From: Botryllus schlosseri
Lineage: Eukaryota
Direction of reading: 5' to 3'
DNA length: 64,000 bases
Assembly (NCBI GenBank): GCA_051294905.1
Contig: CM119377.1
Span: 4,340,001 to 4,404,000 of the forward strand
Shown here: piece by piece, positions 6,282 to 32,071 of the stretch
How the letters are laid out: every line of letters starts with the position of its first letter
How positions within the stretch are numbered: the first letter of the stretch is position 1
The notes under the pieces: model-generated
Database searches by the model: none
The model's input: only the letters and a program-made list of their open reading frames with translations
What the model was told of the DNA's origin: nothing
Position numbers and translations under genes: made by a program

Positions 6282-9200
6282 ATGAAGACGTTCATTGTCT
6301 TAACTCTTCTATTACTAAATGGTTTCTTCGAAAAAACCGACGGAGGAACTGGATCACCAAAGAATCGAGTAATTTATGAATTGACTGACAAAAATATCGA
6401 AGTAGCCGTCAAGAAGAATTATTTTGTTGTGATATGTTTTTGTGAGTATATAAAAAAGCGTACATAGGTTGTCACGTCGACTATATTTTAAAATTCGATT
6501 GTTCACTAGATTCAGGGAAGTCAAGAACTAGTCGTGAATTTGATCAAACTTTCCTTCAAGTGGCGCAAGAGGTACGCCGGGAGTTTAAATTTATACACTT
6601 CACGCGAATCGACGTTACAAGATATCCTAGGATCGAAAACGAATATAAAATATCGGAGCTTCCTATGCTAAAATTTTATAAGAATGGAAGACATTATGAT
6701 TTCATCGGTAAGAAACTGTCCGAGATATTTGTGTCTGCTTGAAGCGTTTACGGTCAATATCTTTCTAGGGGATAAAAGCGTCAAGCACATTACCACTTGG
6801 ATACACATGGCATTGAACACTCCATTTGTATTGACGTCTGGCTCCCAACTCGATAGTTTAAGGAAAGCAGGAACCGTCATTTTAGGATGCTTTCCAAATG
6901 TATGTTGATTTTTCGTTCGTTAATTCCATAAGCGACAATTATTCATACGGAGAGCTCAAATACTATTACAGGAAAAACCAGCGGACGAATATGACAAATT
7001 TATCAACGCAACACACTGGTTTGTGTCAGCCAAGTACATGCCGTTGCCAATGTTTGCCGTGATAGAAAACGAGGAAACTATGTACGAGTGTGGAGTGGAT
7101 AAAGGATCCGTAACCGTTCTCAAAAGTGTCAGTAAAGCTTGTTGTTTGAATATATTTATTTCAATTCACGTTCAATCCATAATGATTAGTTCGATGGCCG
7201 GGAAAGAGTGACGTATAAAGGATTGCTTACTGACTCCGATCGCCTTCTGCAATTTTGCGAGGACGAGAGTCAACCAGTAGTATTTCCATACGGAAGAGAG
7301 GAGGTAACATAATTTTATTATACGGAACATAATAATTCACACCTTAGGTAGACTGCTGGGTATAGGCCTACGCGTGCAATTGTTTTTGTTTAACTTTGTC
7401 ATGTCACAGTTTACAATGAAATTGACTATGGGAAATGTCAAACATCAACACGTTTTATTCATGGATCCGAAAAGTTACAACTTCAAGGAAACTTACGACA
7501 ACTTCAGAACTGCAGCAAAATCTTTCATGTCAACTCCGGTTAGTGAAAATCGTTGAATATAAGAGTTCGTTAGGAAACTAAAATAATCATGAATATGAAT
7601 ATACGTAGATTTCAAAGATACAATAATAGCGTCATCTATGATGACAGAATATGATACCAGTCGTCTCTGTTTGAATTGTCACATAATAAATGTAGAACTT
7701 CAACCCATTTTCGTCAGATGCAGATCTACGTCAGCGCTGCTTTTCAATGCACCAAAACGTTTTCTGTTATTAAACTAATCTTAGTGATATCATGCTTAAT
7801 GAAAATGTGACTGCGCTGACCACTTTTCTCTGTGGCATTAATATATATTTTCTTACTCCATGTCAGCCATACATAGATCAATGGCTCACCATTCACCAAG
7901 TAGTTAGTCATGTGTGAGTTGTAGCCGTAAGCACATTGCACAGAGGACGGATTCGCAGAATTCCATGGGTTACGCTAGCCTAGCCTCGTGGTAGCCTTGT
8001 GTTCGGATGATGATAGTTCGTTACAACTATCGTTTCATGTTATAAGCGCTGCGTTATACCGTTTCAGGATGACATACAGGTACTATTTATACACGTTGAT
8101 CCGACGCAAGAGGGAATCGATAAAGTTACTTCATTCTTCCACGTCGACGTTACGCGAGATGCACCATGCAATCGCATGACCAAGTTAGATGAATACCATT
8201 CGAGATTTGTACCATCACAGAATGATTTTACCAAGGACGGATTCATATCTTTCACAAGACGAGTATTGCGTGGGAGTGTCAGGGTATGTATGCCAGTTTA
8301 AATGTTTTGAAAGTCGGTTGTGTAGGCATATTCTAATTTTATATGATAAGCTCTGTAGACAATCTAATGGTACTGCTCAACTTAAAGTTGACTCTTTTAT
8401 TCAACGCAAAAGATTTCATAATGTTGCAGGAGGCGTCTGAGTCTTTATATAGCCTATACATATAATCTTAGACCTGCTCACATGGTATAACAGGGATATC
8501 TTTGCCCAATTTCAGCGCACGACACGAAGTGAAGAACTTCCTTCGGATTGGAACAGATACCCTCTCAAAATACTGGTCGGATCCAACTATGAACGCGTAA
8601 CGCGTGAACGTGGAAAGACAGTCTTTGTTATGTATCGTAAGTATAGAATTCATTATATTGGTATCGAAAATCAGAATGTGCTTGAATTCAATTCACATTA
8701 ATTCAATTACTTGAAAGATTAAATAAAGATTAGGGCTCTATACAGTTTCGTCCTTGGTAGACTATTTACTGTGTGTCCCAATTTCAGGATATCGCCCGAC
8801 ACAATCATTAAATGTCATCCCCAATGACACTATTATATACTATATGATTTGGCATGAAATGGCTAAACCTTGTTAATAAACGATCCTTATTCCCAAATTG
8901 TTCATAGGCTATTGGTATTGCTCAATGCTCAAAAATGCTACTTTATATACCTAACGCTTGTGACGATATACCCTTAGCGGCCTTGCTGCTGAGAAAAAAC
9001 TGAGAACGGAGTTTAATAGGTGTTGTCGTACCTACTTGTGCTTTATCACAATACATAATTCACGCAAGCATCCCACATTTGACAGAGATCCCTTACAACG
9101 AGGCGTGTAAGAAGGCACTGCCGGTGATGGACGAAGTTGCGATGAAAAACAATAACAACAACTCGGTTGTCATCGCTACGATGGACGTGAGCAAAAATGA

Positions 9201-10076
9201 TGGCGAAATTGATGTGCATTTCGAATTTCCATCCTTCAAGTTATTTACAAGTGATAATAAAGTAAGGAGAACAGTTTTGAGTTTCCATAGATACGCAATA
9301 TTAACAGTAATAAATATCGTGAACGCGAAAATGAAATATTTTTCGAGTAGATAGAATTGTTGTTGGAGTTATAGAATTTTCTCAATATCGGTTGAGTAGC
9401 CAATACCTAATGATTTCCAAGGTAGTTGCACAGACCTTGCATAAGTACTGACGTAAGTAGCCATGCCAGTTGCCACCACGACTCACAGGCCCCTATTTTT
9501 CCATGTATCGAATTCCCTCATGAAACCGTATAGTGAAGGGTTTGATTATAATTATATTGTACATGCTGTCATTGCTGTGTACTTAAATTGTAGAATGTAA
9601 GTATTTTGGTGAGTCTATCTATACGAATCACAAGTTCATGGAAGTAAATGGCATAGGTTTATTGATGACATGGCTTGGCTATATATATTATGATTTAAGA
9701 TACCAAATGGCGTATAGGCCTACTTCGTGTAACTATAGATACATGACATCTCGTTGACAGTACTGCAAAAACGTTCTGCGTTTTTCACCAGGTTTTGAGA
9801 TTCACGGGAACACAGACTGCCGAAGCCATTCAATCATTTATTGACAGCAACGGGGCGATCCACATTGGGGTATATCATGTTTATTCGTAACTATATTCCA
9901 AAACTTTCTTCGATTTACGTGAATGTGATTTCGTCAGGGCATCGATCCAAAAACCAAACCTGCAAGTATCTACGAATTTGGAGATAAGAAATATCAACTT
10001 TACAAGGATCCAGATGCACTGGATTACGGGAAAATGGAAGAGTTACAGACATCAATTCTTCCGATCGGCAAGCACA
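6282..10076 (+). CDS. PDI module 1 (signal peptide + a-b-b'-a' + linker)
   Basis: Signal peptide MKTFIVLTLLLLNGFFEKTDG. a-site SRTS (6521-6532), a'-site NEAC (9097-9108). Ends at a phase-1 GTGAGT donor, not at a stop. Confidence 0.92.
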
Positions 10077-10390
10077 GTGAGTTAGCTAATTCATTTACGG
10101 TTGTTCGTAAATTAAAAATGATCAAGGTTGCTGGGTAAGAAATTTCCGCGAGAAAGTTAAACCTCGGAAGGTATTATAAGGATAATTGGAGTAATTTGTG
10201 GGGATTACCTGAATGGGATTTTCTGAAGATCACTTGAACAATGAACTGAACAAAAGTGAACAGAGGCGGTCAAGTTGAAAGGCAGTGGCCTACAGAAACT
10301 TGCTCAAGTACGACATTGTGGTGCGAAATGCCAACAAGCTATAAACACCAAATATTATATTTAAATAAGTATCAACAACAACAACAAAAC

Positions 10391-10421
<31 letters not shown>

Positions 10422-10582
10422 GCAACAATAACAATAACAATAGCAACAATAACAATGCCAATAACAATGCCAATAGCAATAACATTACCAATAGCAATAA
10501 CAACCAGTGTTCCCAGTATACTTTCTTCAGTGGAATTTAGCCGGAAATAATTCGCCGGCGGTTCGCGAAAAGGAATGATCTT

Positions 10583-10628
<46 letters not shown>

Positions 10629-13600
10629 TCAGATGTAGTAAACACTGTATACAGTATATCCAAAATAGATCTTGCGGGAGCAGCATCACGCCTCTCCGAT
10701 ACTTCAAAAAGGGAAGCACTTCGTTTTTAACACTATCTGCATGTAATTTAAGTGGACACGACATGGGTAGAAGTTGGCTCCCTCCTGCATGGTGGATGTC
10801 TTTGTATGCGAACAGGCTCGCGTTCATTTCAACATTTGGCGTTTCACTTCGACTCAATTCTTTGTGTTGCCTATACGCACCGTTGTTATAGTCAAAGGAT
10901 ACGAGCCACTGGCCTATAGTTGTTACTTTTAACTTGTGATAAATCTGTAATCAATTTTGTCTTTTATGCGTGCAGATCTACACAATGAGACTAACCGAGT
11001 GTTCGAGATTGACGATGACGGCCTTGCCAGCATTATAAAATATGCAGATTTTTACGTAGTATGCTTTTGTAAGTAAATGCCGTTCAACCTGAGGTGAGTA
11101 GGATCTTTCTAACAAATATTGTCTATGATATAGATTCGGAGAAGTCCAGACGGAGTCGCGAGTTCCAGTCTGAATATTTTAACGTGGTGGTGGAAGTGCA
11201 CAAGACAAACCCGTACATTCGCTTCGCAAGGATTGACCTTGACAAACATCAGCATATTGAGATTAAGCACAAAATTGATGAAATACCGCTGCTCAAGTTC
11301 TATAAGTACGGGCGACACTACGACTACAGAGGTAAAACACTTTTGTGTAGCTGGAATCTCATCATGTTAATTTCGAATGGGCCGTTTACGGTTTGGGAGG
11401 CGTGAACTTTTTAACAAACGGGAATGTCCACCTACAAGGTATAAATCCAATGAACAAAGTCAATTTTCGGTTACCTGTCCATTCAAAGCGACTGTTTGGG
11501 GGATGAGATTCTTCCATGTGCCGTTGCTAGACCGGTGATTTGATGCTGAATTTTGTATGCAGGGATTCCCAAGGCTGATAATATCACCAACTGGATTCAC
11601 GTAGCCATGAATTTACCAGCCATTGTTCCGTCCTCAAGCGAGTTTACAGAAATGAAAAAATTAGGTTCCGTTATCGTCGGCTGTTTTCCAGGAGTGAGTT
11701 GGAATCAATTTGTCGGTCTGCAAGTTTATTTCATCAACACTGGTTCTTTTCCAATAGGAAGCACCACAAGCGGAGTATAAGAAATTTTTGAATGCGAGCG
11801 CGTTTTTCGTTTCTGGTAAAAATCTGCCATTGCCACTCTTTGCTCTGATCAACACGGCGAGGTTGATGAGAGAACTCGGGTTCGCGAAAGGATCAGTGTC
11901 GGTTATTAAGAGTGTAAGTGTCATTTGTGGAAAGTGCTAATCAGTGACATCCAGGTTTCTCAAAGTGCAAGTACCTTGGTCTGATTAATACCTCTCAATC
12001 CTACTGGGATAACTTTTATTGGCTAGCGGTTCGTATATAGAAGTGACTCTCCATCGCAGGCTAATTTGTGATAGTTAACATTCGTGTTGGTTTATTTTTG
12101 AGCTTTGCCAATGACGATATGATTGTATATTGTCTCTTGTATTACGCCATGTTCCTTTTGTAAGCTATCGTTCTATATTCTACGCCAAACATCGGTTTGT
12201 GGGAAAGCGTGACGCGTACGAATTGCCTCCAAATGGTACCAACATATACTCTGTTTGAATTTCCGGCTATTATTTTTAAAAGTTATATTACAATCGCATT
12301 TCTATACGGTGATGGGTAACTTGAAAGTCGAATATCTATTTAGGAATATATAAACACTTCGTTCACTAACACGCCGGGGCCTACGATACAAGCGGAGTTA
12401 TTGCCGTCGAAAAATTTGGATTTGAATAAAATAGTATTTATGGTGGTCACCACTATAATAAATAATTAACGAATTGGTCACCGTAAATACTATTTTATTC
12501 ATGATCCAAATTTTTCGACGGAGATAACTCCGCTTCCACTGGTTGAAACTCAACCAAATTTGATGAACATCGTTTCTACAAACAACCTAACACTTTCATG
12601 GGGTGAACAAAAAATTTTCAAATTTTTTGTTATTTATTTTTATATATTTAAATAATAAATAATATTTATACAATGAATAGAAACTTTCTTCTCATGTAGC
12701 AATGCGGCTACTGGTTGGATTTGAACCAAATTTGGTGTATAGGCTTAAATTAGGTAACCTAACAATTTTATCAAGTAGCCAGTGCGATTTGAGAAAAAAG
12801 TCATTTTTGAAGAGCCCTAATGTACACTTGTTCTTAAACATTTTTTTGTTTGTAAGTTTGAAAACGGAGCGAAATCGGTGTACGGGGGATCAATGTCTGA
12901 CTCGGACAAGCTGCTGAAGTTTTGCGAGGAAGAATCCCAGCCGCTTGTTTTCCCTCACGGTCAAGCTGAGGTATAAGCGGATTAAACTTAACGATTCTAT
13001 GAATAAATGAAGCAATGTATTCATCCGCGTCGATATTCTTTCAGTTTTCTTATATTTTGACGAGACGAGACACTAAACTGCAACACTTATTGTTTATGAG
13101 CCCGAATGATTACAATTTCAAGTCCACTTTCAACAGCTTCAAGGAATCGGCGAAGAAATTCAGAAAATCACAGGTTCGCGATTGAATGAAGTTACGTTTC
13201 GATATATAACATTGTTCGTTCGTTTATTAACATCATTATTCTTTTGTCGCTATCCCAATACAATTACATCGCGATATTATGTGGTATTTATATTGAATAT
13301 TGTTATTATGGTAGTATTATCATGGTCACCATGTATCTAGTACTGAATACATATGTACAGTATTGGACACGTGACAAAGCATGTCACCTGTTATTTGAAC
13401 GTCTGGATGTAAGGTGGAAAATATAGCTCTCTAAAACGTTCTGTTGCATCTGCGTTAATCTACATTCTACAATGTCAGGAGATTTTCGCCTTTATTATTC
13501 GAAAGCATTGTCAGACCTGTCAATACAGCATAAAATGTCTAATCACTAATGCTACTCTTTTAGAGTGACATCGAGGTTTTGTTCATCCACGTCGATACAA

Positions 13601-16600
13601 CGAAGAAAGACATTGAAAATGTTTTGGCGTTCTTTCACGTCGACCCAAAAAAAGACGTGCCTTGCAACAGGATCGCAAAGCCCGACGAATTTCATTCGAG
13701 ATACGTTCCGGAGAAGAAGGATTTGACGGAATCGGGATTCACTGATTTTACGAGACGAGTTTTGGATGGGAAAGTATCGGTGGGTAAATGACCAAGCTGT
13801 GTAATCTAAAGTGACATGAATGTATTTCTTCGGCTTAATTATGAAGTGCTAGGTTTTATTACTTGAAAAGAAATTCATTCAGTAGTTTTGAAAAGTTCAT
13901 TTAGACGTGGGTGTCGCATGCCTTTGATAGCAGGGGTATGGAATCTATTTCGTCAAAAGAGTCATACCCTATGATTTCAATTGTAATTCTGAAAGAGCCA
14001 TATGAGGATTTCTATTTACCATTACGTCACAATTGAGGATTTGTGAAGTCATGGGGACACGTACAATCGAAGTAAACTATGCACAAATACATGTAAATCG
14101 TCTTGTGCACCATATTTGCTGTGTAATCTCGTGTTAATGCCCCACTCAAGCCCGTTGCTCGACGTTTGCACATGCGACGCAATGAAAAACGCCAGTTGGG
14201 CAAGGCACAATTATGCTTAGGTACAGGTTTTGGGAAGCTTTTGCAAGCTTCACATTTTTAATTTTATTTCCCTGAGAGCCAATATGATGTTTTTTTAAAC
14301 TTAAGGCAATTAAAATGTACATTTTACCTCAAAGCAGACAATGGTAGACAACATTAAACATGTGAATTTACTGTTTCTTCCTCAGTAACACACCCTAGTA
14401 CTGTCAGCGACTTTCCAAGGAATCCGCAGCATCCGCGAAGGGAGCCATGGCTAAATTGTTGAACTGGCATTTATGCAGGCTCAATCAGTTCCTATGTACA
14501 GTAATAATATATTTAGCCCACACTCATCGCATATTCTCTTTGCCAATTATGTGTCATATACGTACAGAAAACCGTCCGAAGCGCAGACCTACCGAGCGAC
14601 TGGGACAAATATACTTTGAAGATACTCGTCGGTAAAAATTACGAAGAAGTTACGAGGAAAAAGGGACAAATAGTGTTTGTAATGTACTGTGAGTACACTG
14701 GCATCAATGGGCTCGATCCTCGGAAAATACTAGTCGTTTTTTTCACGATAAGATGTTCCCCAAGTCGACGAATGCAAAAGGGTGATGCCGGTTATGGAAG
14801 AGGTGGCGATGAGATACCGTGGTAACAGCACTGTTACCATAGCGACGATGGACATAAGCCAAAACGACGTCGAAATTGACGTTTTCCAAGAAGTGCCAAC
14901 GTTCAAAATGTTTACCGCGGACAATAAGGTGCACTTTCGAATTTTAAATACTGATATCACACGCGTAAATAATGTTGTGTTCAGATATACCGATTCAATG
15001 GAACCAAGTCGGTGGAAGCCGTAATGGAGTTCATCGATAGCAATGGAGAGAGCGAAACCGATGTGAGTTGATAATTATGTTCAGAGGTAGTCAGCGTTAG
15101 CGTTACTCAATTGCAAGTACAATAGGAAATTTACAAGACAGTATCGTAGAAGTAGGGCTGTTGCCTGGGCGATTCGGTTATGAATCGACTTTATAGGGAT
15201 AGGCAACGTATTCGAGTATATCTTTTTGTGACGTGATAAGATGATGGATGCTATGAAATTTTAAATGTGTAATTTAATGCGGCCGCAAAGAATATGATGT
15301 CAGTCCCTCACCACATCAAATATCATTTGGTAGTTTTTTATTGCACTTTGTGGCAATATTGCGGGTTGATCCCTAGCTCACGGCGTAGTGGTATAATCCA
15401 CAGCTACAACACCAATGGATTGTGGGTTCGATTCTGACCGAGGTCGACTCCAGAATTTCTACCTAAGTGTTAAAGGTTTATCTAGGCTCCTCCTCGCCAT
15501 CTCATCCGTGTAAGCCAGTGGTTCTTAACCTTTTTTCCTCCAGCGCCCCTTTCAAAAATTATCGTGCTCCAGCGCCCCCCACCTCATATTGTAAGGACTG
15601 TATTAAAGACAATGGGCAAGAGGGCCCTAAGCACTTCGTCAGCCCCCTAAAAACGGGTTCTATACCACTACCGAGAAAACCATTACCGAGAATGGACATT
15701 ACCGAGAATGCTATTACCAAAAATGGACATTACCGAGAATGGACAACACCGAGAATGGACAACACCGAGAACGGACATTACCGAGAATGGACATCACCGA
15801 GAATGGCCAGTGCCAAGAATCCAACTTACTGGGACGGAAATTATCGATATTTGCACCTGAGAATCGACACCTAATGTGACAACGTCGTGATGCACATACA
15901 CACGACCTGTACACATGCATAACATGCCTGCATTGCATGTATTGCATTCTCGGTAATGTCCATTCTCGGTAGTGTCCATTCTCGGTAATGTCCATTCTCT
16001 GTGGTGTCTATTCTCGGTAATGGCATTCTCGGTAATGGTTTTCTCGGTATTGACCGGACACCCTAAAAACGATTTTCTTGCGCATTCATAGCGTGATAAA
16101 CCAAACTTCTGCGGGCTTCGCCCCCAAGAACCCCGTCGCGTGATTTCGATTGTCAGCAAAGTTTGTGTGGCCTGGTCGCCCTGGGCGTCAAATTTTTTTA
16201 TAATGCATGAATGAATAGGTGGTAATTGCATATATATGTCGCTATAAACTTTCTATCCTCTCCACCCAGGTAATCAGATTTACTAGTAGCGCTGAGTGAG
16301 CTGTTGTATTAGAAAATGAAGGCCACGTAATTTATAATTGAACATATTCGGGCGTGCCTGTTGGTACAATTAATTTGTTACATGTTGTTATTTTGTTACC
16401 TCTTGTCCGGTATATAGTCAAAAGATATTGAAACGCATAAACGTATTAAACCAATGTAAGCACACGATTCAGAATTGGTATTTCTTAACAGGCAAATAAT
16501 TTTATCTGATGGATGTTATTTGTCCTGTGGGGTGCAGATTGCGACAATACGATAATTCGGCACGAGCGATTTAAGAACCTATGGACAATTAGACTTATAT

Positions 16601-22600: not shown

Positions 22601-25600
22601 TACTTGGAATTGAGTCCAATTTGTGTTGCATCGTCTTTGAAGACAGCTCAACAATTTCATGGGGTTGACAGAAAAATTTGATTTTTTTTAATTTTCCCTA
22701 ATAAATCAAAATTTTGATTGGATCTGCGGAGTCTTATACTTGTTAGAATTGAACCAAATTTGGTGTGCAGCGTTTTTAGGGTAACCTCACAATTTAATCA
22801 GTGAATGGCTGGAATCCAGAAAAAAAGTTATTTTTGAACAGCCCTAGTGGACTGGCACGGGTTTTGGCAAATGCAGAGAAGTATTGATTCGAGTCACGAT
22901 TTTTTAGTGGCTCGACTTGACTCGGGTCATTTTTTAAAATGCGTTTAATGACTCGACTCGACTCGAGTCAATTTGTGTATTGACTCGACTTGTACTCGAG
23001 ACATTGTGCATGACTTGAACCAAGTCATATGACTCGAAACTAGGACGGCCAAGACAGACATTTCATTGTAACTTCGAAGAATAGTAAAGTCACGGGATTT
23101 CGTCTATCACTCCTGATACGTGACAAATAGGACCAGAAGCTGTTAGGACTGAGGAAAATTTCGATAATATGAATCCGATCCACTCTATATCACTCAAGCA
23201 GAGTTGAAAAAGTGGGCCGAACCGGATTGAACTGAAAACTAAACAATAAACATAATGGTTGGGACTCGAGAGTCAAAACACTTTGACTCGGACTCGACCC
23301 TCTTACTAACTAACTTGGACTCGGACTTGACTCGGGGGTGAATTGAGAATGACTCGACTTGACTCGAGTCAAAACTACAAAAGGGAGATTGACTTGTGGC
23401 TCGTAACCTTGTGACTCAGAGATGGAAGTCGGGCCGGGCTTTTCGGGTTCGGGCCGGGTTCGGGCCGGGCTCGGGCCGGGTTCGGGCCCAAAGTTATAAA
23501 AATTATCGGGATTGAATCGGGCCGAATAGTCACTACGAAAAGCATTTGATTTGCAATTTTGTTCGAAAGTGGCACAACTACATATAAAATACACCAATAC
23601 CGTATCACGTATAAGTATGGCAATATCTGTGAATAAATTTTATACGAAGTACGAACCCAGATAAACTTCATTATAAGACGGCGGTGTTAATATTTATTAA
23701 AGAAAGCTTTTAGATGCGCCATAGTGATTTTGTCGTCCATGGTGAATTGCTTTAGGTCTATACGGAAACTAACTTATATTGTATTAGGCTATGTGACAGC
23801 GGTAGTATTGTTATATAGCAGTGTTGGGATCAAGTCACTTCCTTCGAGTCACGAGTCATTTCGAGTCATTGCGCATTTTGACTCGAGTCAAGTCAAGTCA
23901 ATCGATTTTCAAAGGTGACTCGAGTCAAGTCGAGTCAAGTCAAGTCAAGTCACGAGTCAAGTCACAATTCAAGTCAAGTTGCCATTTCGAAGTATGAGGC
24001 ATGATTGCATCATTGCATTTTGCTAGCTGTCTGAAATACATATTGAGTGGTCCCTGATTCTGAACCGCTAAACGAATATAGAGTTGAATATACACGCAAG
24101 CAGGCGCTGTATCGCTCACATATACGTATAACTGGTAAACTACGTTGATAGTCACCAGCCAAAATAGAGAATAGAGAATTGATTGAGAACGAATTGATAA
24201 GATGCAATACATTACCCATTTACAAATTGAGAGACGAACCCGACTGTATCCAGTAACTGTTGAGGCTATTGAAATAATCAATTCTTCGCATAACGTGTGA
24301 ATGCAACGCCCTTTGTATGGATGACAGTTGACTTGTATTTTGAACACACTATTTTTTCTCATCTTGGCCAATTTCATTCCTTTATTGCTTTAATTTAGTT
24401 TAATATTGAACCATTTAATACAGTCCACATTTTGCAAAAAGGATGGTGGAACTAAGTTAACAGTGGGGCTGTTTTCAGCGTATTCTCATTCAGACATATT
24501 AAGTTCTCTTGTCATATGCAAGATTGCTATCGAAAGAAAACAAAGTGAGAGCATTGAAAGCGTTGAAAAGCTCGAAATTTGAATCGTATATCAGCTTATT
24601 TGCTCGCAACAGTTGAAAATTGCTATTTGAACTAGGTTTCGGGCCGAAACGGGCTCAAAACTCTACCGTCGGGTTCGGGCCGGGTTCGGGCTGAACTTGT
24701 CGGGTTCGGGCCGGGTTCGGGTCCGGCTCACCCGGCCCGCTTCCATCTCTGTTGTGACTTGGTTACAACCCTGGACAAATGTAAAGCGTAAATAGATAGT
24801 CTGAACATCTGCATCACTAACCTAATTCTGAGCCTTACCGGGATGTTGTCAAGACCAGTGTTGGTCAGTAATGAAGGACTTATATTTTTTCAGAGTGATC
24901 GAGTAGGTTTTGACTATACTTACGCTCACTTACTCAATGAGGCTATACCTGTGTTGATGGACAGCTTTGAAAGGCTAATCTACTTTCTTCATAAACTCTG
25001 TATTTTGTAAACTATAGAAAAGAGTTTTGGGATGTTTTCATTGGCATAACAACTGCATGGGCGAAAGAGCCGGACATCACGGTAGCCGAATGTAATTTCC
25101 AAAATTGAACAACTCATGTGCATTGTCGTTAGTCATTTTGCATTGATCGCAAAGATACATGTTGCTTTCAGAACTTTATTTCAAACTTCCAAGTAGTTTC
25201 GGTATATCTCCTTAAAAAACTACTTTTAAATGTAATTGAGTAGAAATATACGGCGTCATTGTAACGCTAATTATTTTCCCCATGCACCCCCGTTCGAAAC
25301 AGTGTTCCCCACAAGTCACTTCATTAGAATGGGTCTAAAGTCATGCAATGGGTAATATTTATTTTGTGGGGGCGCAAGAACCGCAAAGTGCCTTTGTTGT
25401 GACGCAGCTTGCTCTACGCCAGGGGTCGCCAACTCAAAACGGGAGCGGGCCACTTTTCAAATCTCATAGAGGCCGCGGGCCGCAAGAATGCAATATCGAG
25501 ACAAATCAGGCCAGACCTTTTGCAACCACGCTGCTTCAGTTATTTATGTCTGTACAACGCTGTGCTCTGGGCGACGGGCATAGTGTCAACAAAAGAAGTA

Positions 25601-28600
25601 ATATGTTATTAGATAAATACAAATTCTACAAAAATATCATGATCATCAATTTAATATTATTTTGAAATATGAGCTGCACATGATACCTGACAACCCTTTT
25701 CAGCGAATAAGGAATCGATATTGGAGCTAGCGAGACACTGTACTATAGGTGAAAGACTATCTCCTCGTAAGCTTGATCCTATGGGTAGCACTAAGCCCTT
25801 TTCTAAGCGTCTCAGTCTTTGCAGTGTCTGGGCCGTTGTACGTCATGGCAATATACCCAATTTCCCATGCCCATTCAGATCAGCTGATTCTCCCTCGATG
25901 GAAAGCTGTAGACACAACATCGCCAAAGCCGTTTCAGCTAGTGAGGAGTAGTGATGTTAGGCGAAAGATGATAGCTTATTTTGAAACAGCAACAACAATA
26001 TTTTGAAACTGGAATTAATTTCAGCAGTTTAGAATGCTTTACTTAGCGTTCTTCTGAAATCTGAAATCAGGTCGCGGGCCGCGGAATATGACCTCGCGGG
26101 CCGCGTGTTGGTGACCCCTGCTCTCGGCTATACTGATCATTCTAAGGTTTTAACGTCGATTTACAGGATGAACTCGAGGTCTTATTTACCCTCGCCGATA
26201 CCAGCAAGCCAGACATAGCCAAGGTCATGTCATTCTTCCACGTAGAGCGGAACAATTTGCCGTGCAATCGCATCGGCAAAGCGGACAAGTTCCACTCGCG
26301 ATTCGTACCGAACAGACGGGATTTCTCGAGACAGGGTTTTGTGGACTTTACGAACGATGTCATGAAAGGGATGGTTCCGGTAAAATGCAATTCTTTGACT
26401 CACTTTGTATATACGTTGTATTTTAGTAGTCACAATATGACTGTAGCGCGTCGTTATAGAATATTTTGATTCTTTCCAATCTACACTGCTCAGAGTTCAT
26501 GGACAAGTTTTATCAGTAGAAGAAGGATTTGTAATTCTCTGTTGATGACGATTGATGATAGTGGGACATTACGAATATCGCGTTTTATGCGTGATGATGT
26601 CGTGAGACGAAACACCATAACCATGACCAAATTCTGTCATGTCTTTCAGCGTAATCATAAAAAATGAGACGGTACAAAATGACTGTGTGACATCGAAATA
26701 ATGCGAACCTTTATTGCAATTCTGTGCAATTCGCAGATTACTTGACAAAAAAGGGGTCAATACTGTTCTCAATTTTACTGTCTATGAGATTCATTTGCTA
26801 TTTCACTCGTAAAAAGACTTAACGCAATACCTATAAAAGGTATGTTATCTCAAGAAATTCCAATGATTGCCAGTACGAGGTCGACGTAGAATATTGTGAC
26901 TATCCATCAATCAAAGAGAGCCAGCGATGTTGCATATAGATACCACACTAAAATGCGGTCACACTGAAAACGAAATCCGTGCATTTGTAAAGATTTTCAA
27001 CATAGCGCCAGATGCTTATCATGTCACCGGCACTTTCAGTGAAAACTCATATTTCACAGCCAGAACAGTTATTGTGTATGTTGCCGTTTACCTTTACACC
27101 TCGATGACATATGCCTTCGTAAGGTGGTACAGTAAGCACACCAGATTTTGCTCTCAGATTGTTACATACCATTTATGCGACATCATTGAAAACGCACTTT
27201 ACTTCTATGCTTGATTATAAACTTCCAACTACCATTCCAACCCTCCGCTTATTTCAAGCGTACTATTCTGTCCGAACGACTCCCGGACGATTGGGACAAA
27301 TATCCCTTGAAGATACTGGTGGGCTCCAACTATGAACAAGTCACGAGACTGAAAGGAAAAGCCGTGTTTGTTGCGTACTGTGAGTATAGAAGGCGATACT
27401 TTGATAACTTTTGGAGCTGCAACGGCACTTTTTCAAAACGTTCGTGAACCTTTGTTTCGTTTGTGGATAGGTTGAAGTTAGCGTCAAAGCATTTTAACGA
27501 ACTCTGACTCCGACTAGAGAGGATGGTATAAAATTTTTGTGACTCCGACTCTGCAGCCTTGGCCATAGGTATTAGTAATATTACTATTACTATTACGGTA
27601 CTATATTTAAAACAAGTTGAGTGACGCTCATCACAACACTAGGTTTTTGGGTCCCACTTATACGATCACAAACAAGGGTAATCATATATTCGAAACATCT
27701 AAATTCTGAATCATTCAGTACTGTCTTATGTATTTTCGTTATTGTCTTACCACGGTAGAGGTAATACAATAATCGCAAGTTAATATATTCAACACGGCGA
27801 AGGATAGTTTGACTAAACTGCTTGGATATTCGGAAATTTTCGAAAACGCAATTCAAAGATGCTCTCAAAATTTTTCATCCCTGAAATCACCTTTTCACGA
27901 TAAGATGTAATTTTTCGTGTATAGACATCCCCGAGCACGCAGAGTGTGAAAGGTTACTGCCGGTCGTCGACGAACTCGCGATGAGATACAAGGACAACAA
28001 GACTGTCATCATTGCCGCTGTCGACGTGAGCAAGAATGACGTAGATATAGAAGTTCACACGGAATACCCGTCTTTCCGACTCTTCACTGCCGATAACAAG
28101 GTTCGTTTCTTCGGCATATCAAATGAAGTCGAAGTTCGTCGAAGTTTACTTCACCCCGGAGATAATTGGATGCGATTGTCAGCTTCGAACCTCGGATAGG
28201 ACATATGTTATCCCTACATATGGCGACACGTTGCTCTAAGTTGGCCAACCGAAACTACGAGCCCGAATTCTAAGACCCAGGTCACCAAATCTGTCTGCGA
28301 AGAATGGTTTTTGAACACTGGTGTTGAATTTTCCACTAAGAAGGGAATCAGTTCATTCTCTCTTTTAGATAAAAGCTCTCAGAGGTGAAAAATCTCTTAA
28401 CACCATGATGGCCTTCATCGATGCCAACGGAGCACCCAACTACATGGTGAGTGATCCAGGATACTTTTGTTTTGCAAATTTTCCAAATATCCCGACTGCC
28501 CCGCGAACGCATCTGGCCTTTTCCCGTTGTAGGACTTCGATTCGTATAGTCGCGGTAAAGGAGGCTACGAGTACGAAGAACAGGCTTACGGCACGTATGA

Positions 28601-31346
28601 AGATCCCTTCAAAATGAACTACGGAGCTGGCGATCAAAAGTGGGACAAATGGCGCGATTCCGATGGCAAGATGCAAGATGCCCTCAAAGATATCGAAGGT
28701 GCTCCATAGCTTGAGTGATTGCTCATTCTTCATTCAGAATTGCAGTCCGGACGCGGATGTGCTGTGCACATTGTGCATTCGTATGCCTAATTTTCCAGCA
28801 TGGATTTTAAGATAATGTAAACATGGTCAGTGTTATAGATTACTTGACCACGATCTGACATGTTGACTTCGCCTATCGTGACACGCCATGTCATCTCCCT
28901 CTCTTGTCCTGTTATGTTCTTGATCTTGTTTGAGCAATAACTCATACGACGAGGTTGTAGTATGAAATAATGTTATCAGCAGAATGACTTTGGGGCAGCG
29001 ACACGGCCCAGAGTGCAGTTCAACGAAAGACAATAGACAACAGAACACAGGGTATAAATACGATGCACGACACACGTGGAAATAATAATTGGCGGTAATT
29101 AATAATCCGAGAAAAATCAGAGATAAACGATACCAACGTAAAATGCAAAAACACAACATGTCCTTCTGCTGTTACTTTACATTAGGCGAGCATGCCTCTT
29201 ATTCGCATATTCTATAGGGCGGGCCAAGGTGCCTGATTGAAATACTACTCCCAGACGTTTCGACTCCTCACCGTCTATTCATTTTGCAACAATCTTGTGA
29301 TGGTTTAAACTGATGAAAATATAAATAAACGAATGAATGAATGATAATCATAATAGCAGAAATATCCATGAACAATGAACATATAATTGTAAACACTCAC
29401 ATAACCGGCGGATGCACAATGCACATATCTCTCCTAACATAGAATCTGGACATTGTTACATATTATCAGTGTTGGGATCAAGTCACTACCTTCGAGTCAC
29501 GAGTCATTTCGAGTCATTGCACATTTTGACTCGAGTCAAGTCAAGTCACTCGATTTTTGGAGGTGACTCGAGTCAAGTCGAGTCAAGTCAAGTCAAGTCA
29601 CGAGTCAAGTCACATTTCAAGTCAAGTAGCCTTTTCGAAGTATGAGGCATGATTACATCATTGCAATTTGCTAGCTGTCTGAAATACAGATTGAGTGGTC
29701 ATTGATTCCGAACCGATGAACGAATATAGAGTTAAATACGCTAGCAAGGAGACGCTGCATCGCTCACATATACGTAGAACTATTAAACTACGTAAGTAAT
29801 TGCATAGCCTACCAGCCAAAATAGAGAATAGAGAAACGAATTGATAAGATGCAATACATTACCCATTTACAAATAGATATGATACAATTCGAGCATGCGT
29901 TGAGGACAATATAAACTATATTCGAATTCAATTCAAATAAAACAAGAGGTTTGGTAAAGGTAACAGAACAGAAATAGACATTTTGCTATTTTATTATTTT
30001 ACTACTAGAGTGAACGACAGCGTAAGCTGTAAGCTTCGATCACTTCGCTTGCCGTCAATTTATTTATGAGAGAACAATCGCGGCTCGGTGAAACGCTCGA
30101 TCATTGAATGATTGGTCGCTTTCAAGGATTACACCAGCGTTACGCGAACAATACGAACATATGCAAGATACAGTGATTTTTAGCGACACCGATTACTTGA
30201 TGACTTAGGTGGCGAGATAGCGCAGTGGTATAATCCGCGGCTGCAACACCAATGGGTGCGGGTTCGAGTCCGACCGAGGTCGACTTCCGAATTCCGATAC
30301 CTAAGTGTTGGAGGTTTACCTAGGCTCCTCCTCGCCACCTCATCCGCGTCAGCGGTGTCTTACAAAAGCCTAGAGGTGGGCCGTGCTATAAGTCGGCAGT
30401 TACGGAAAATATGAAGAATATCGGCCTGGTGTAAATGACCATAGCAGTCGACAAACACCATGAATACCCCAAAACAAACAAAAAACAAACTTGATGACTC
30501 GTGAATTTTGCTCCGAGTCACGAGTCAATCCACATTTCTGATCCGCCGAGTCAAGTCAAGTCAAGTCATTTTAGCAAAGTGACTCGAGTCAAGTCAAGTC
30601 ATACGAAAAAAGTGACTCGAGTCTGACTCGAGTCAAGTCATGACTCGAGTCATCCCAACACTGCATATTATTATATTTATTTTTAACATCACGGATAACA
30701 TCCTACCAAGTCACACTACTTCGACTTTAACCCAACTCCAATTTTCAGTCTAATATTTTGAAATGATAGAACTCTTTGTATAACTGAATGAAACTGGTTA
30801 TGTCATAATGAAAGGAAGTTATCACGCTCTGTGCTTTGTCTTGAATGCAACTGGCTAGATCAGAAATCCTGTGATTTACATACACAATCAATCACGGATG
30901 CAATGTGTCACAATGTCCAGAATGTTCAGAACAATACGTATGTATGAAAATAAAGTCTCTCTCTCTCTCCCTCTCCCGTGTCTGAGTTATTGGTCGCGGT
31001 TCCGTGCATGCCTTCCTGGATTGTATATCGCGCTCCCCATAGCGACTCAATTTATACTACGCTTATAACCTACATACGGTCTGTATGAATTTATTAGTCC
31101 AAAATATATGTAACAACAGGCAGGGACCCGAGCGACAGCGCAGGAGACGCGGTGGACAAGACTTACCGGAACGTCGACGACGATTGGAATCTCGACTCGG
31201 CAAAGTACGCCGACTTCGACGAAACGCCGAGTTACAGCGACACCTCCCGGTCTTCGTATCAACGTTCTTCAAGCTCAAGCGGAAGCTCCAACTACCATCG
31301 CAGCTCCGGTAGCCGTTTCGACAATCGTTATCACGACGAACATTGA
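6282..31346 (+). CDS. Triple-module, redox-inactive protein disulfide isomerase-like ER protein (P4HB/PDILT family), predicted 1669 aa, 34 exons
   Basis: Exons: 6282-6441,6510-6707,6769-6899,6972-7127,7190-7303,7410-7538,8068-8283,8516-8636,9086-9261,9792-9869,9938-10076 | 10976-11068,11134-11331,11563-11693,11758-11913,12857-12970,13045-13173,13564-13779,14568-14688,14753-14928,14985-15062,18706-18862 | 19722-19835,20556-20753,20812-20942,21642-21794,22214-22330,22394-22522,26167-26379,27259-27379,27925-28100,28369-28446,28533-28698,31120-31346. All junctions are GT/AG and phase-compatible, total 5010 nt. PDI motifs include YELTDKNIE, LPMLKFYKNG, LPSDWD/NKYPLKILVGxNY, IATMDVSKND and FPSFKLF. 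PDI identity is high confidence; the single-transcript model is inferred. Confidence 0.8.
10372..10628. repeat. (AAC/AAT)n microsatellites, two blocks (10372-10505 imperfect, 10583-10628 near-pure)
   Basis: Visible trinucleotide runs in the intron between PDI modules 1 and 2. Confidence 0.95.
10976..18862 (+). CDS. PDI module 2 (a-b-b'-a' + acidic linker)
   Basis: Begins at a phase-1 acceptor (...TGCAG|ATCTA) with no signal peptide seen. a-site SRRS (11145-11156), a'-site VDEC (14764-14775). Internal exon lengths 198/131/156/114/129/216/121/176/78 are identical to module 1. Ends at a phase-1 donor. Confidence 0.9.
12390..12819. mobile_element. Partial hAT MITE, family B (right ~2/3)
   Basis: Ends AAAAGTCATTTTTGAAGAGCCCTA and is collinear with 45153-45814 and 47761-48421. 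The left TIR is missing. Confidence 0.85.
15516..17742. mobile_element. Non-autonomous hAT element (CAGTGGTTCTTAACC family) with nested inserts
   Basis: TIR CAGTGGTTCTTAACC / GGTTAAGAACCACTG. Perfect 8-bp TSD GTGTAAGC (15508-15515, 17743-17750). Subterminal CAGCGCCCC motifs. Confidence 0.92.
15656..16060. mobile_element. Foldback/Mutator-like element with arms of tandem ~16-bp CATTACCGAGAATGGA units
   Basis: Left arm repeats and right arm reverse-complement repeats (CATTCTCGGTAATG). Flanked by the duplicated CCCTAAAAACG (15645-15655, 16061-16071). Confidence 0.75.
18295..18481. mobile_element. Right-end fragment of a GACTCGAG-motif hAT MITE
   Basis: Ends GTGACTTGGCTACAACCCTG and is homologous to ~23170-23416 joined to 24752-24772. 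Confidence 0.65.
19339..19587. repeat. Duplicated ~70-bp unit (19339-19410, 19517-19587) around a hAT-like end (GGTTGAAGAGCCCTG, ~19434-19448)
   Basis: GTAATxCAAATCTGGTACGCCCCAGTACACCCC occurs twice, with repeated TACACCC subterminal motifs. Confidence 0.6.
19722..31346 (+). CDS. PDI module 3 (a-b-b'-a' + C-terminal tail ending HDEH*)
   Basis: Begins at a phase-1 acceptor. a-site SRAS (20567-20578), a'-site HAEC (27936-27947). The last exon 31120-31346 ends ...RFDNRYHDEH*; its donor at 28698 (GTGCTC) is weak but phase-consistent. Confidence 0.87.
20081..20350 (-). mobile_element. tRNA-derived SINE, young copy
   Basis: Near-identical reverse complement of 30207-30488, with a (CAAA)n tail at 20081-20096. 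Confidence 0.9.
22548..22846. mobile_element. Right half of a family A hAT MITE
   Basis: Collinear with ~1840-2150 and ends GTTATTTTTGAACAGCCCTA. Confidence 0.85.
23417..24751. mobile_element. hAT non-autonomous element (CAGAGATGGAAG family)
   Basis: TIR CAGAGATGGAAG / CTTCCATCTCTG. Perfect 8-bp TSD TTGTGACT (23409-23416, 24752-24759). TCGGGCCGGG subterminal repeats at both ends. Confidence 0.92.
23819..24350. mobile_element. Truncated CAGTGTTGGGAT-family MITE nested in 23417-24751
   Basis: Starts CAGTGTTGGGATCAAGTCAC and is collinear with 29467-~29900. No right TIR found. Confidence 0.8.
25420..26120. mobile_element. hAT (Charlie/Buster-like) MITE
   Basis: TIR CAGGGGTCGCCAAC / GTTGGTGACCCCTG with GCGGGCCGC subterminal motifs. 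Degenerate TSD CTCTACGC / CTCTCGGC (6/8). Confidence 0.8.
29467..30663. mobile_element. hAT MITE (CAGTGTTGGGAT family) carrying a SINE
   Basis: TIR CAGTGTTGGGAT / ATCCCAACACTG. Perfect 8-bp TSD CATATTAT (29459-29466, 30664-30671). GACTCGAGTCAAGTC subterminal arrays. Confidence 0.93.
30207..30488 (+). mobile_element. tRNA-derived SINE, full-length young copy
   Basis: Pol III A box TAGCGCAGTGG and B box GGTTCGAGTCC, (CAAA)n tail, and an ~11-bp TSD ACTTGATGACT (30195-30205, 30489-30499). Confidence 0.92.
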
Positions 31347-31464: not shown

Positions 31465-31470
31465 AATAAA
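31465..31470 (+). terminator. Candidate polyadenylation signal of the PDI-like gene
   Basis: First AATAAA noticed after the stop at 31346. Confidence 0.45.
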
Positions 31471-32071
31471 TGTTCCGACTATCTCTGTGGTTCGACATCA
31501 GTGTCACAAACGGAATACCAGACAATAACGAGAGACGTATGACTTTCTGGAGGGGAGTTTTCAATTCTGTTGACCGATTAGGAAGCCATTTTTTAGGAAA
31601 AGCATTTGTTTTGCAACACCACTTGTATATTTTTGCGTGAGCCGCAATGTTCAAATTTGCAATGATCTAACGTGTCTACACTGGCTCATGTACTCGATTT
31701 TGTGCAGCCCCACGCACGACATACCGCCCACTTTGCTAAATGCAATCACAGCCTGCTTATGTTCTCAATACATGTCGAAACTACGTGATTCTGTTCGGAA
31801 ATCAAGAAACCAACTCGGTTAAATAATAAATCTATTCCATCTTCATCGTACTGCAAGAGATCATAAGTTAAGCATGTACACAACGTGAAGATTGCGGGCA
31901 TATAAATACGAAAGAAAAATATAAAACAAATAGAATCTCGATTGTATATGAATGTCAAGTCATCATAAGCCTAATTGTAAATTGAAACAAGTCAGTTCAT
32001 ACAGCGTGCGAGATTGTTGGCTCGTGCATATTCGTTAGTAATGTTGACATTATGGAGAGATGTTCAGATCT

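What the first reader, a model, noticed from the sequence alone, without database searches (positions are those of the whole stretch)
6282..31346. Three PDI genes read as one: a 1669-aa protein with 12 thioredoxin folds
At first sight this is a tandem cluster of three P4HB-like paralogues. However, only module 1 has a signal peptide and only module 3 has a stop with an ER-retention-like end. Modules 1 and 2 end at strong phase-1 donors (10076 GTGAGT, 18862 GTACGT), and modules 2 and 3 begin at phase-1 acceptors (10976, 19722). Joining gives in-frame linkers (...GKH-N-LHNE..., ...SQ-G-LHDK...) and an uninterrupted 5010-nt CDS. Canonical PDI has 4 Trx folds, and I know of no described (abb'a')x3 protein. 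It could be a multivalent ER chaperone or scaffold.
Basis: partly seen in the sequence, partly recalled or inferred. Interest (0 to 1): 0.9.

Follow-up and report, generated by a model that had tools for sequence, protein, structure and literature searches.

The report
Triple PDI-like protein from one gene
Three neighbouring copies of a protein-folding helper gene (PDI-like, but without its catalytic cysteines) in a sea-squirt-type genome are spliced into one 5.2-kb messenger that encodes a single 1669-residue protein with twelve thioredoxin folds, an architecture I could not find described anywhere.

Summary
On the + strand, 6282-31346 carries three paralogous PDI-like modules (a-b-b'-a'), 44-50% identical, with matching exon lengths. 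All 34 exons have GT/AG sites and join into a 5010-nt ORF of 1669 aa.

- **Signal, stop, poly(A):** only module 1 has a signal peptide. Only module 3 has a stop and an AATAAA.
- **Junction 2 (18862>19722), seen directly:** RNA contigs from two studies cross it. One is a 5185-nt contig with no mismatches.
- **Junction 1 (10076>10976), indirect:** I could not lay reads on it. That contig's coordinates fit 32 nt 5'UTR + 5010 nt CDS + 143 nt 3'UTR, ending 19 nt after the AATAAA. This only works if modules 1 and 2 are joined too. RNA runs also hold only the exon words around this junction.
- **Catalytic sites:** none has CXXC. The a domains read SxxS and the a' domains xxxC.
- **C-terminus:** it ends HDEH. 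The single-module relatives in Ciona and Clavelina end HHEL and FDEL.
- **Origin:** the three modules form one clade, sister to the single-module tunicate proteins, so the triplication is lineage-specific.

This is a new variant of a known family. Function as a multivalent chaperone or scaffold is inferred, not shown.

The parts
6282..10076 (+). Module 1 (a-b-b'-a' plus linker), 11 exons, 1618 nt. Starts with ATG and a signal peptide. Exons: 6282-6441, 6510-6707, 6769-6899, 6972-7127, 7190-7303, 7410-7538, 8068-8283, 8516-8636, 9086-9261, 9792-9869, 9938-10076.
   Evidence: Splice-site and frame model. Aligns end to end with PDI-family proteins. Exon pieces hit Pfam Thioredoxin. Words of the last two exons (9792-9869, 9938-10076) are present in RNA runs.
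10077..10975 (+). Inter-module intron 1 (899 nt), phase 1. Holds (AAC)n microsatellites and an apparently unused ATTAAA at 10111.
   Evidence: GTGAGT donor and cag acceptor. RNA runs hold 0.16-0.17 of the words of 9700-11100, which is the exon-only expectation of 0.16. No first-exon or terminal-exon candidate lies inside. The joint itself is inferred from the coordinates of the 5185-nt contig.
10976..18862 (+). Module 2, 11 exons, 1569 nt, with no start codon context, no signal peptide and no stop. Exons: 10976-11068, 11134-11331, 11563-11693, 11758-11913, 12857-12970, 13045-13173, 13564-13779, 14568-14688, 14753-14928, 14985-15062, 18706-18862.
   Evidence: Model. The joints 14688>14753, 14928>14985 and 15062>18706 are seen in RNA contigs.
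18863..19721 (+). Inter-module intron 2 (859 nt), phase 1. It has no AATAAA or ATTAAA. An in-frame stop at 19709-19711 lies just before the acceptor.
   Evidence: The joint is reported as 18860>19720 with 'cut +2', that is 18862>19722, with GT..AG ends. It is seen in X3 (5185-nt contig, depth 24.3) and in X7 (401-nt contig, a different study). Spacer scan.
19722..31346 (+). Module 3 plus C-terminal tail, 12 exons, 1823 nt, ending ...RYHDEH and TGA at 31344-31346. Exons: 19722-19835, 20556-20753, 20812-20942, 21642-21794, 22214-22330, 22394-22522, 26167-26379, 27259-27379, 27925-28100, 28369-28446, 28533-28698, 31120-31346.
   Evidence: Model. The first exon is laid in RNA contigs, and the loose end after 19835 reads the start of the exon at 20556. 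The terminal exon has no second copy in the window.
6282..6350 (+). Signal peptide coding part of exon 1 (MKTFIVLTLLLLNGFFEKTDG...).
   Evidence: Translation. It aligns with the signal peptides of the Clavelina, Ciona and Logan relatives. In a related genome the signal and the start of the a domain also lie in one exon.
31465..31470 (+). Poly(A) signal AATAAA. The inferred cleavage site is near 31489.
   Evidence: Sequence. The 5185-nt contig leaves 143 nt after the stop, so it ends 19 nt past the hexamer (arithmetic).
18706..18862 (+). Linker exon of module 2. It carries the family's conserved tail helix (EKREKMWSQDEMKSMESAI). The counterparts are 9938-10076 in module 1 and 28533-28698 in module 3. 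All three end in phase 1.
   Evidence: Alignment with the tails of the single-module relatives. The matching stretch of the Clavelina protein is modelled as a helix, residues 520-540. The exon is expressed.

Best explanation
**Gene structure.** This is one gene, not three. About 25 kb of DNA is transcribed into a roughly 5.2-kb mRNA of 34 exons. It encodes a 1669-residue (193 kDa) protein that enters the secretory pathway through a single N-terminal signal peptide.

**Protein.** It has three consecutive PDI-type modules, each a-b-b'-a', so twelve thioredoxin folds in all. The modules are joined by linkers of about 50 and 70 residues. Each linker keeps the short conserved helix found in the C-terminal tail of the single-module relatives.

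**Chemistry.** No module has a CXXC active site.
- The a domains read SRTS, SRRS and SRAS.
- The a' domains read NEAC, VDEC and HAEC.

The protein therefore cannot work as a normal oxidoreductase. It most likely acts as a non-catalytic, multivalent client-binding chaperone or scaffold. PDILT is described that way in its structure paper (PMC4894388). Human PDI serves as a subunit in the solved prolyl-4-hydroxylase and MTP complexes.

**Origin.** The gene arose in this lineage from a single-module ancestor with an HDEL-type tail. Tandem duplication was followed by fusion. The phase-1 donor of the penultimate exon now splices to a new phase-1 acceptor, which lies just after the former signal-peptide region of the next copy.

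**Shown:** the exon structure, the open frame, junction 2, the splicing inside module 2, and the family relationship.

**Inferred:** junction 1 (from contig arithmetic and word shares), the fold of each module (by alignment), the function, and the order of evolutionary events.
For: 1. **Open frame.** The frame is open over 5010 nt across 34 GT/AG exons.
2. **Junction 2 seen directly.** X3 record 1 is a single 5185-nt RNA contig with no mismatches. It joins 14567-14688 | 14753-14926 | 14983-15062 | 18706-18860 | 19720-19835. X7 record 6, from another study, joins 14822-14926 | 14983-15062 | 18706-18860 | 19720-19780.
3. **Contig arithmetic.**
   - Record position 2687 falls at the end of module 2's seventh exon, and 2687 = 32 + 1618 (module 1) + 1037.
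   - Record position 3333 falls at 19835. Adding the remaining 1709 nt of module 3 gives 5042, which leaves 143 nt of 3'UTR.
   - The contig therefore ends 19 nt after the AATAAA at 31465-31470.
4. **Word shares.**
   - The same RNA runs hold 0.16-0.17 of the sampled words at both junction regions.
   - This equals the exon-only expectation of 0.160 at junction 1 and 0.164 at junction 2.
   - The spacers are therefore absent from the RNA and the flanking exons are co-expressed.
5. **No separate gene ends.**
   - There is no signal-like first exon or terminal-exon copy in the spacers.
   - There is no poly(A) hexamer in spacer 2.
   - An in-frame stop lies at 19709.
6. **All modules conserved.** Each keeps 83-88 of the 143 columns that are invariant in the single-module relatives.
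7. **Family and fold.**
   - The modules align over all four PDI domains.
   - The relative P0008 matches PDILT (5xf7) and human PDI end to end at E about 1e-25.
   - The AF2 model of the Clavelina relative matches human PDI abb'xa' with target TM-score 0.78-0.80.
8. **Tree.** The modules form a clade (99/97) sister to the single-module tunicate proteins (99/98).
Against: - Junction 1 was not seen directly.
- Logan contigs drop rare variants, so minor isoforms or separate transcripts cannot be excluded.
- No protein-level evidence exists.
- The 1669-aa protein and any multi-module relative are absent from the protein libraries searched. The architecture therefore has no comparative support outside this genome.
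- Two 2026 bulk RNA runs, sampled at 6%, show no reads on the exons. Expression is restricted and its site is unknown.
- The HDEH end does not fit the usual KDEL-type rule, so ER residence is uncertain. The rule is from my own knowledge.
Confidence: 0.87

Rival explanations
1. Three separate tandem paralogous genes. On this view the long RNA is only a minor read-through ('conjoined') transcript.
For: - Tandem paralogues are the default reading of such a cluster.
- An in-frame ATG at 10966 lies just before module 2's first exon, and an ATTAAA lies at 10111.
- Logan contigs show presence, not proportions.
Against: - Modules 2 and 3 have no signal peptide and module 3 has no possible start. A stop sits at 19709.
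- Modules 1 and 2 have no stop, no terminal exon and no poly(A) use. RNA word shares at both spacers are exon-only.
- The 5185-nt contig runs unbranched at even depth.
- No first-exon candidate was found in the spacers.
Confidence: 0.04
2. An operon-like unit. The acceptors at 10976 and 19722 would be spliced-leader trans-splice sites that release separate mRNAs for modules 2 and 3. Earlier notes of this scan read the genome as an ascidian with SL trans-splicing.
For: - Other agents' notes describe SL trans-splicing in this genome.
- Exon-only word shares would also fit trans-splicing.
Against: - After either acceptor there is no in-frame ATG for over 100 codons and no signal peptide.
- Cis joints are seen at junction 2 in two studies.
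- The contig has 2687 nt upstream of module 2's eighth exon, not about 1050.
- No loose end is listed at 19722, although 85 loose ends were not shown.
Confidence: 0.03
3. A module-cassette gene. Every module boundary is phase 1, so the locus could also make one- and two-module isoforms, for example 10076>31120, 18862>31120 or 6441>11134. The three-module mRNA would then be only one product.
For: - All of these alternative joins are frame-compatible.
- Logan contigs drop rare variants.
- Only one junction region was laid.
Against: - The 5185-nt contig is unbranched at constant depth.
- The only listed joint that uses the 18862 donor goes to 19722, in both runs.
- No evidence for any skipping joint was seen.
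Confidence: 0.12
4. A polyprotein. The 193-kDa precursor would be cut in the linkers into three separate PDI-like proteins of about 60 kDa.
For: - The linkers are long, about 50-70 residues.
- The matching tail of the Clavelina relative is modelled with low confidence outside one helix.
Against: - I saw no dibasic or furin-type site in the two linkers (my reading).
- Fragments 1 and 2 would have no retention signal or tail.
- Nothing was tested directly.
Confidence: 0.05

Closest known systems
Single-module CXXC-less PDI-like proteins of tunicates: Ciona intestinalis XP_026693694.1 ('PDI-like protein of the testis isoform X1'), Clavelina lepadiformis XP_076808897.1 ('PDI 2-like'), and a 588-aa Logan transcript protein
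   Same: - Same family, sister clade at 99/98 support.
- Same a-b-b'-a' order.
- Loss of CXXC in both catalytic domains.
- Shared family motifs such as GCFP, LPCNR, HSRF-P and PSDW.
- Same acidic tail with a conserved helix.
- In a related ENA assembly, signal peptide and start of the a domain lie in one exon, as in module 1.
   Different: - They have one module of 556-601 aa. The Ciona and Clavelina proteins end in FDEL or HHEL; the Logan protein ends AHSGL.
- The window protein has three modules in one chain and ends HDEH.
- Identity to the window modules is only 27-37%.
- The Ciona, Clavelina and Logan a' sites have Ser where the window modules keep Cys.
Vertebrate PDILT (PDB 5xf7)
   Same: - a-b-b'-a' PDI fold without catalytic CXXC.
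- PMC4894388 describes PDILT as lacking the catalytic cysteines and likely working as a chaperone.
- From my own knowledge PDILT has SxxS in a and SxxC in a'. This compares with SRTS/SRRS/SRAS and xxxC here.
- Best sequence match in the PDB for relative P0008, E 1.5e-25.
   Different: - Single module.
- Orthology is not shown. P0008 scores the same against human PDI (92.7 bits) as against PDILT (92.8 bits).
- The fold match of the Clavelina model is better to human PDI than to 5xf7.
- KEEL end and testis restriction of PDILT are from my own knowledge and could not be compared.
Classical PDI / P4HB (PDB 4el1, 7zsc, 6i7s)
   Same: - Same four-domain fold, target TM-score 0.78-0.80 for the Clavelina relative's model.
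- 24-27% identity over the whole module.
- The proline aligned with PDI's YPT/FPT loop, the cis-proline from my own knowledge, is kept in a and a'.
- In the solved complexes P4HB is a subunit of prolyl-4-hydroxylase and MTP.
   Different: - P4HB has two CGHC sites and KDEL, and is a single module of about 500 aa.
- It forms a separate clade at 100/100 support.
Multi-thioredoxin-fold ER proteins: ERdj5 (six Trx-like domains), ERp72, TXNDC16, UGGT (domain counts from my own knowledge)
   Same: They are secretory-pathway proteins built from several thioredoxin folds.
   Different: - None is a repeat of a whole a-b-b'-a' unit, and none reaches twelve folds.
- ERdj5 gives only a poor fold match to the relative's model, TM-score about 0.2.

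Membership tests
PDI family, PDIA1-type (a-b-b'-a') | Four thioredoxin-fold domains in the order a-b-b'-a' | tested here: met
   - Each of the three modules aligns over the full length of classical PDIs and of the tunicate relatives.
- Exon pieces hit Pfam Thioredoxin.
- The relatives hit Thioredoxin and Thioredoxin_6.
- The relative's model matches human PDI abb'xa' with target TM-score 0.8.
- The fold of the window modules themselves is by alignment only.
PDI family, PDIA1-type (a-b-b'-a') | Catalytic CXXC (CGHC) motif in a and a' | tested here: not met
   In the columns of CGHC the modules read SRTS, SRRS and SRAS in a, and NEAC, VDEC and HAEC in a'.
PDI family, PDIA1-type (a-b-b'-a') | N-terminal signal peptide | tested here: met
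   The protein starts MKTFIVLTLLLLNGFF..., aligned with the signal peptides of the relatives. No predictor was run.
PDI family, PDIA1-type (a-b-b'-a') | C-terminal KDEL-type ER retrieval signal | tested here: not met
   - The protein ends HDEH.
- Relatives end FDEL, HHEL and AHSGL.
- No ...[DE]EL-stop ending occurs in any + frame between 5000 and 36000.
PDILT | SxxS in a and SxxC in a' (motif pattern from my own knowledge) | tested here: inconclusive
   The a domains are SxxS in all three modules. The a' domains keep only the C-terminal Cys, as N/V/H-x-x-C.
PDILT | Orthology to vertebrate PDILT | tested here: inconclusive
   - Relative P0008 scores 92.8 bits against PDILT and 92.7 bits against human PDI.
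- No PDILT sequence was available for the tree.
- NCBI's automatic name for the Ciona protein is not a test.
PDILT | Testis-restricted expression | not testable with these tools
   Run metadata are coded. I can only say that expression is seen in some studies and absent from two 2026 bulk runs.
Calsequestrin | Three Trx folds with a very acidic, Ca-binding surface | tested here: not met
   - The window protein has four folds per module.
- D+E is 15% and pI is 6.25.
- Pfam Calsequestrin hits are weak and occur only in two relatives.
- The fold match to calsequestrin is weaker than to PDI.

The most novel reading that the evidence does not exclude
A lineage-specific 'poly-PDI': twelve redox-dead thioredoxin folds on one chain, made by fusing tandem gene duplicates. 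The fusion used a newly created acceptor behind the old signal-peptide region. The ancestral HDEL-type retrieval signal has changed to HDEH. On this reading the protein leaves the ER and acts as a secreted or extracellular multivalent binder or scaffold, rather than as an ER folding helper.
Probability: 0.25. Interest if true: 0.7.

Novelty: new variant of a known kind. Interest (0 to 1): 0.58.

Why it matters
**For the PDI field.** PDI-family proteins are defined by how thioredoxin folds are combined. The known members I am aware of have at most about six.
- A natural, expressed (a-b-b'-a')x3 chain without any CXXC site is a ready-made test of what non-catalytic PDI modules do, namely client binding, scaffolding and avidity.
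- It also tests how the flexible U-shaped PDI unit behaves when it is concatenated.

**For gene evolution.** The case documents how tandem duplicates can become one gene. All module boundaries are phase 1. The upstream copies have lost their terminal exon and poly(A) site, and the downstream copies have lost their promoter and signal peptide.

**For annotation.** Automatic pipelines would probably split or truncate this locus.

Tried and rejected
1. **Protein fragments across junction 1.** I searched the 5.8-billion-protein collection with the ORF around module 1's linker exon. No candidate was found.
2. **Full-length or multi-module relatives.**
   - An exhaustive profile search with the b' exon of all three modules gave only 41 hits.
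   - None is a true multi-module family member.
   - P0009 is an unrelated repeat protein and P0012 a chimeric classical PDI.
3. **Hidden gene boundaries.** I scanned the spacers and long introns for signal-like first exons, copies of the terminal exon and poly(A) signals.
   - One hydrophobic mini-ORF with a GTAAGT donor lies at 17127-17166.
   - Only a short, low-depth minus-strand contig of 105 nt (17099-17203, record 4) covers it, and no joint uses it.
4. **Raw-read runs.** X18 and X20 gave no reads on the exons, only on repeats. They provide no junction counts.
5. **Comparative loci.** Two ENA eukaryote assemblies carry one module each within +/-10 kb. The closest exon-level hit, P0001, is not clearly orthologous to any one module.
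6. **Literature.** Searches for PDIs with many thioredoxin domains and for ascidian PDILT found nothing relevant.
7. **Other scans.** Rfam and tRNA scans of 5000-32500 found nothing. Pfam on the long ORFs elsewhere in the window found nothing.
8. **Not done.** The spliced 1669-aa protein has no reference in these tools and could not be folded.
Full report
**What is in the sequence**

The window is animal DNA of about 40% G+C. Earlier notes of this scan read the genome as an ascidian. The nearest named relatives of the gene are from Ciona and Clavelina, which fits.

A translated self-comparison of 5500-33000 shows three collinear sets of exon-sized open segments on the + strand. They match one another exon by exon at 36-67% amino-acid identity.

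I rebuilt the exon model independently with a frame-aware donor/acceptor search and by reading the sequence.
- Module 1 has 11 exons (6282-10076).
- Module 2 has 11 exons (10976-18862).
- Module 3 has 12 exons (19722-31346).
- All 34 exons have GT/AG sites.
- Nine consecutive exon lengths (198,131,156,114,129,216,121,176,78) are identical in modules 1 and 2 and nearly identical in module 3.

Joined, the exons give a 5010-nt ORF of 1669 residues. The calculated mass is 193 kDa and the pI 6.25. There are 15 cysteines and 9 N-glycosylation sequons.

**Are the modules separate genes?**

The sequence alone argues against it.
- Only module 1 starts with ATG and a hydrophobic signal-like stretch.
- The first exon of module 3 is preceded by an in-frame stop at 19709-19711 and has no usable ATG.
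- Module 2 has an in-frame ATG at 10966. It would give a protein with no signal peptide.
- The terminal exon (31120-31346) and the signal-coding part of exon 1 each have only one copy in the window.
- Neither spacer holds a convincing signal-type first exon.
- Spacer 2 has no AATAAA or ATTAAA. Spacer 1 has one ATTAAA at 10111.

The penultimate 'linker' exon of each module ends in phase 1. In module 3 it splices to the terminal exon. In modules 1 and 2 it faces the phase-1 acceptor of the next module.

**RNA evidence**

RNA runs of the same organism were found from several studies dated 2015-2022.
- They hold 0.16-0.17 of the sampled 31-letter words of 9700-11100.
- Most of them also hold 0.14-0.17 of the words of 18600-19900.
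- If only the exons are in the RNA, the expected shares are 0.160 and 0.164.
- So the exons flanking both junctions are expressed together, and the spacers are not in the RNA.

That stretch contains a 3.6-kb repeat-rich intron where a gene boundary could hide.
- In run X3 one 5185-nt contig (depth 24.3, no mismatches) joins 14567-14688, 14753-14926, 14983-15062, 18706-18860 and 19720-19835.
- All its joints have GT..AG ends.
- In run X7, from a different study, a 401-nt contig makes the joints 14926>14983, 15062>18706 and 18860>19720.
- Junction 2 is therefore directly confirmed. So is the long 15062>18706 intron, and so is use of the 18706 acceptor.

- The end of module 2's seventh exon lies at record position 2687, and 2687 = 32 + 1618 (all of module 1) + 1037.
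- The end of module 3's first exon lies at 3333. Adding the remaining 1709 nt of module 3 gives 5042.
- That leaves 143 nt of 3'UTR, so the contig ends 19 nt past the AATAAA at 31465-31470.

A contig of 32 + 5010 + 143 nt is what a full-length fused mRNA should look like. A module-2 mRNA with its own start, or with a spliced leader, would have about 1050 nt upstream, not 2687.

I put junction 1 at about 95% and the single-gene reading at about 0.87 overall.

Two 2026 bulk RNA runs, read at 6%, gave no reads on the exons. Expression is therefore restricted to some tissues or stages.

**What the protein is**

- *Pfam:* exon pieces hit Thioredoxin.
- *Library search:* a profile of the b' exon of all three modules, run against 1.84 billion representative proteins, found only 41 hits.
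  - The real relatives are single-module proteins of 556-601 aa. They are Clavelina XP_076808897/8, Ciona XP_026693694 and related models, and a 588-aa Logan transcript protein.
- *Alignment:* all three modules align over the whole a-b-b'-a' length with these relatives and with classical PDIs.
- *Active-site columns:* where PDI has CGHC, the a domains read SRTS, SRRS and SRAS, and the a' domains read NEAC, VDEC and HAEC.
- *Loop proline:* the proline that aligns with PDI's YPT/FPT loop is kept in a and a'.
- *Solved structures:* relative P0008 matches PDILT (5xf7) and human PDI end to end at E about 1e-25.
- *Predicted structure:* an AlphaFold model of the Clavelina protein has mean pLDDT 72.7, with the domain cores at about 80-90.
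  - It shows four Trx folds and a mostly disordered tail with one helix, residues 520-540.
  - Its best structural matches are human PDI abb'xa' and PDI as a subunit of C-P4H and MTP, at target TM-score 0.78-0.80.
- *Linkers:* the tail helix corresponds to the conserved stretch in the window's linker exons. Each inter-module linker is therefore a shortened copy of the ancestral C-terminal tail.
- *C-terminus:* the window protein ends HDEH, whereas the Clavelina and Ciona proteins end FDEL and HHEL. By the usual KDEL-type rule, which I cite from memory, HDEH should not be retrieved. No alternative ...DEL-stop ending exists nearby.

**Origin**

In a maximum-likelihood tree the three modules form one clade (99/97). 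It is sister to the single-module tunicate clade (99/98), and both are separated from classical PDIs (100/100).
- Pairwise identities are 49.7% (M1-M2), 44.7% (M1-M3) and 44.0% (M2-M3), against 27-37% to the single-module proteins.
- Each module keeps 83-88 of the 143 columns invariant in the single-module relatives. All three therefore look maintained.
- Two ENA eukaryote assemblies carry one module within +/-10 kb.
- In one of these assemblies the signal peptide and the start of the a domain lie in one exon, as in module 1.

So the acceptors that open modules 2 and 3 are derived features. Both are followed by Leu-His.

I infer tandem duplication of a whole single-module gene. Fusion followed, through the phase-1 donor of the linker exon and a new acceptor behind the old signal region. 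A further duplication then carried that junction along. The order of these events is not shown.

**How it probably works**

With no CXXC site the protein cannot cycle as a thiol-disulfide oxidoreductase. What remains of a PDI module is the client-binding surface and the flexible U shape.
- PDILT is described as a non-catalytic chaperone (PMC4894388).
- Human PDI appears as a subunit in the solved C-P4H and MTP complexes.

Three such modules on flexible linkers would bind large or multimeric clients with avidity, or hold several partners at once.

The lone cysteine in each a' site could form mixed disulfides with clients. This is inference.

The site of action, ER or secreted, is open because of the HDEH end.

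**Rivals**

- *Three separate genes with a minor conjoined transcript:* about 0.04.
- *SL trans-splicing of an operon-like unit:* about 0.03. I considered it because earlier notes of this scan describe SL trans-splicing in this genome. It is rejected for lack of start codons after the acceptors and because cis joints are seen.
- *Module-skipping isoforms alongside the full form:* about 0.12. This is not exclusive with the main reading.
- *Cleavage into three proteins:* about 0.05.

**Novelty**

I found no multi-module member of this family in the exhaustive protein search. I found no paper describing a PDI built from repeated a-b-b'-a' units.

It is a new architectural variant of a well-known family, so far seen in one genome. 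It is moderately surprising to a specialist and easy to test.

Noticed in passing
window 15400-16310, 17758-17938 and 18301-18481 (inside the 15063-18705 intron): Dispersed repeats are very abundant in the RNA contigs, with word depth up to 7466 at 18301-18481. Many loose ends at 17865 run into poly(A), which suggests expressed SINE- or retroposon-like elements. There were no Rfam or tRNA hits.
   Followed up: partly
window 23691-24297 versus 29379-29911: Two copies of the same repeat lie in different introns of module 3, at 70-95% identity in translated comparison. Smaller shared pieces are 15389-15510 and 17749-17811 versus 30184-30411, and 18391-18462 versus 23331-23411.
   Followed up: no
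window 6260-6281: A pyrimidine-rich tract ending in ..ttatagatag lies directly before the ATG. It looks like a splice acceptor and could be an SL trans-splice site. The 5185-nt contig has 32 nt before the ATG, which I could not read.
   Followed up: no
window 18706 / 18709: The acceptor of module 2's linker exon is a NAGNAG tandem (caag|gag|). RNA contigs in both runs use 18706, so Glu is included.
   Followed up: yes
window 19781, 19784, 19789: Run X7 carries two contigs over module 3's first exon that differ at four positions. Three of them are listed in the variant table (A>G, G>A, T>C). They are probably alleles.
   Followed up: no
window 10370-10620: Long (AAC)n-type microsatellites fill the middle of the 899-nt inter-module intron 1. 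On the + strand they read through as poly-Asn and poly-Thr ORFs that are not expressed.
   Followed up: partly
protein P0043 (Ciona, 703 aa, MetaClust): This entry contains an exact internal repeat of about 110 residues spanning the b' region. It looks like a gene-model or assembly artefact, not a natural two-module form.
   Followed up: partly
window 46650-49172: Another first-stage note on this window reports a Notch-ligand-like gene here. I did not examine it. The long ORFs elsewhere in the window gave no Pfam hits.
   Followed up: no
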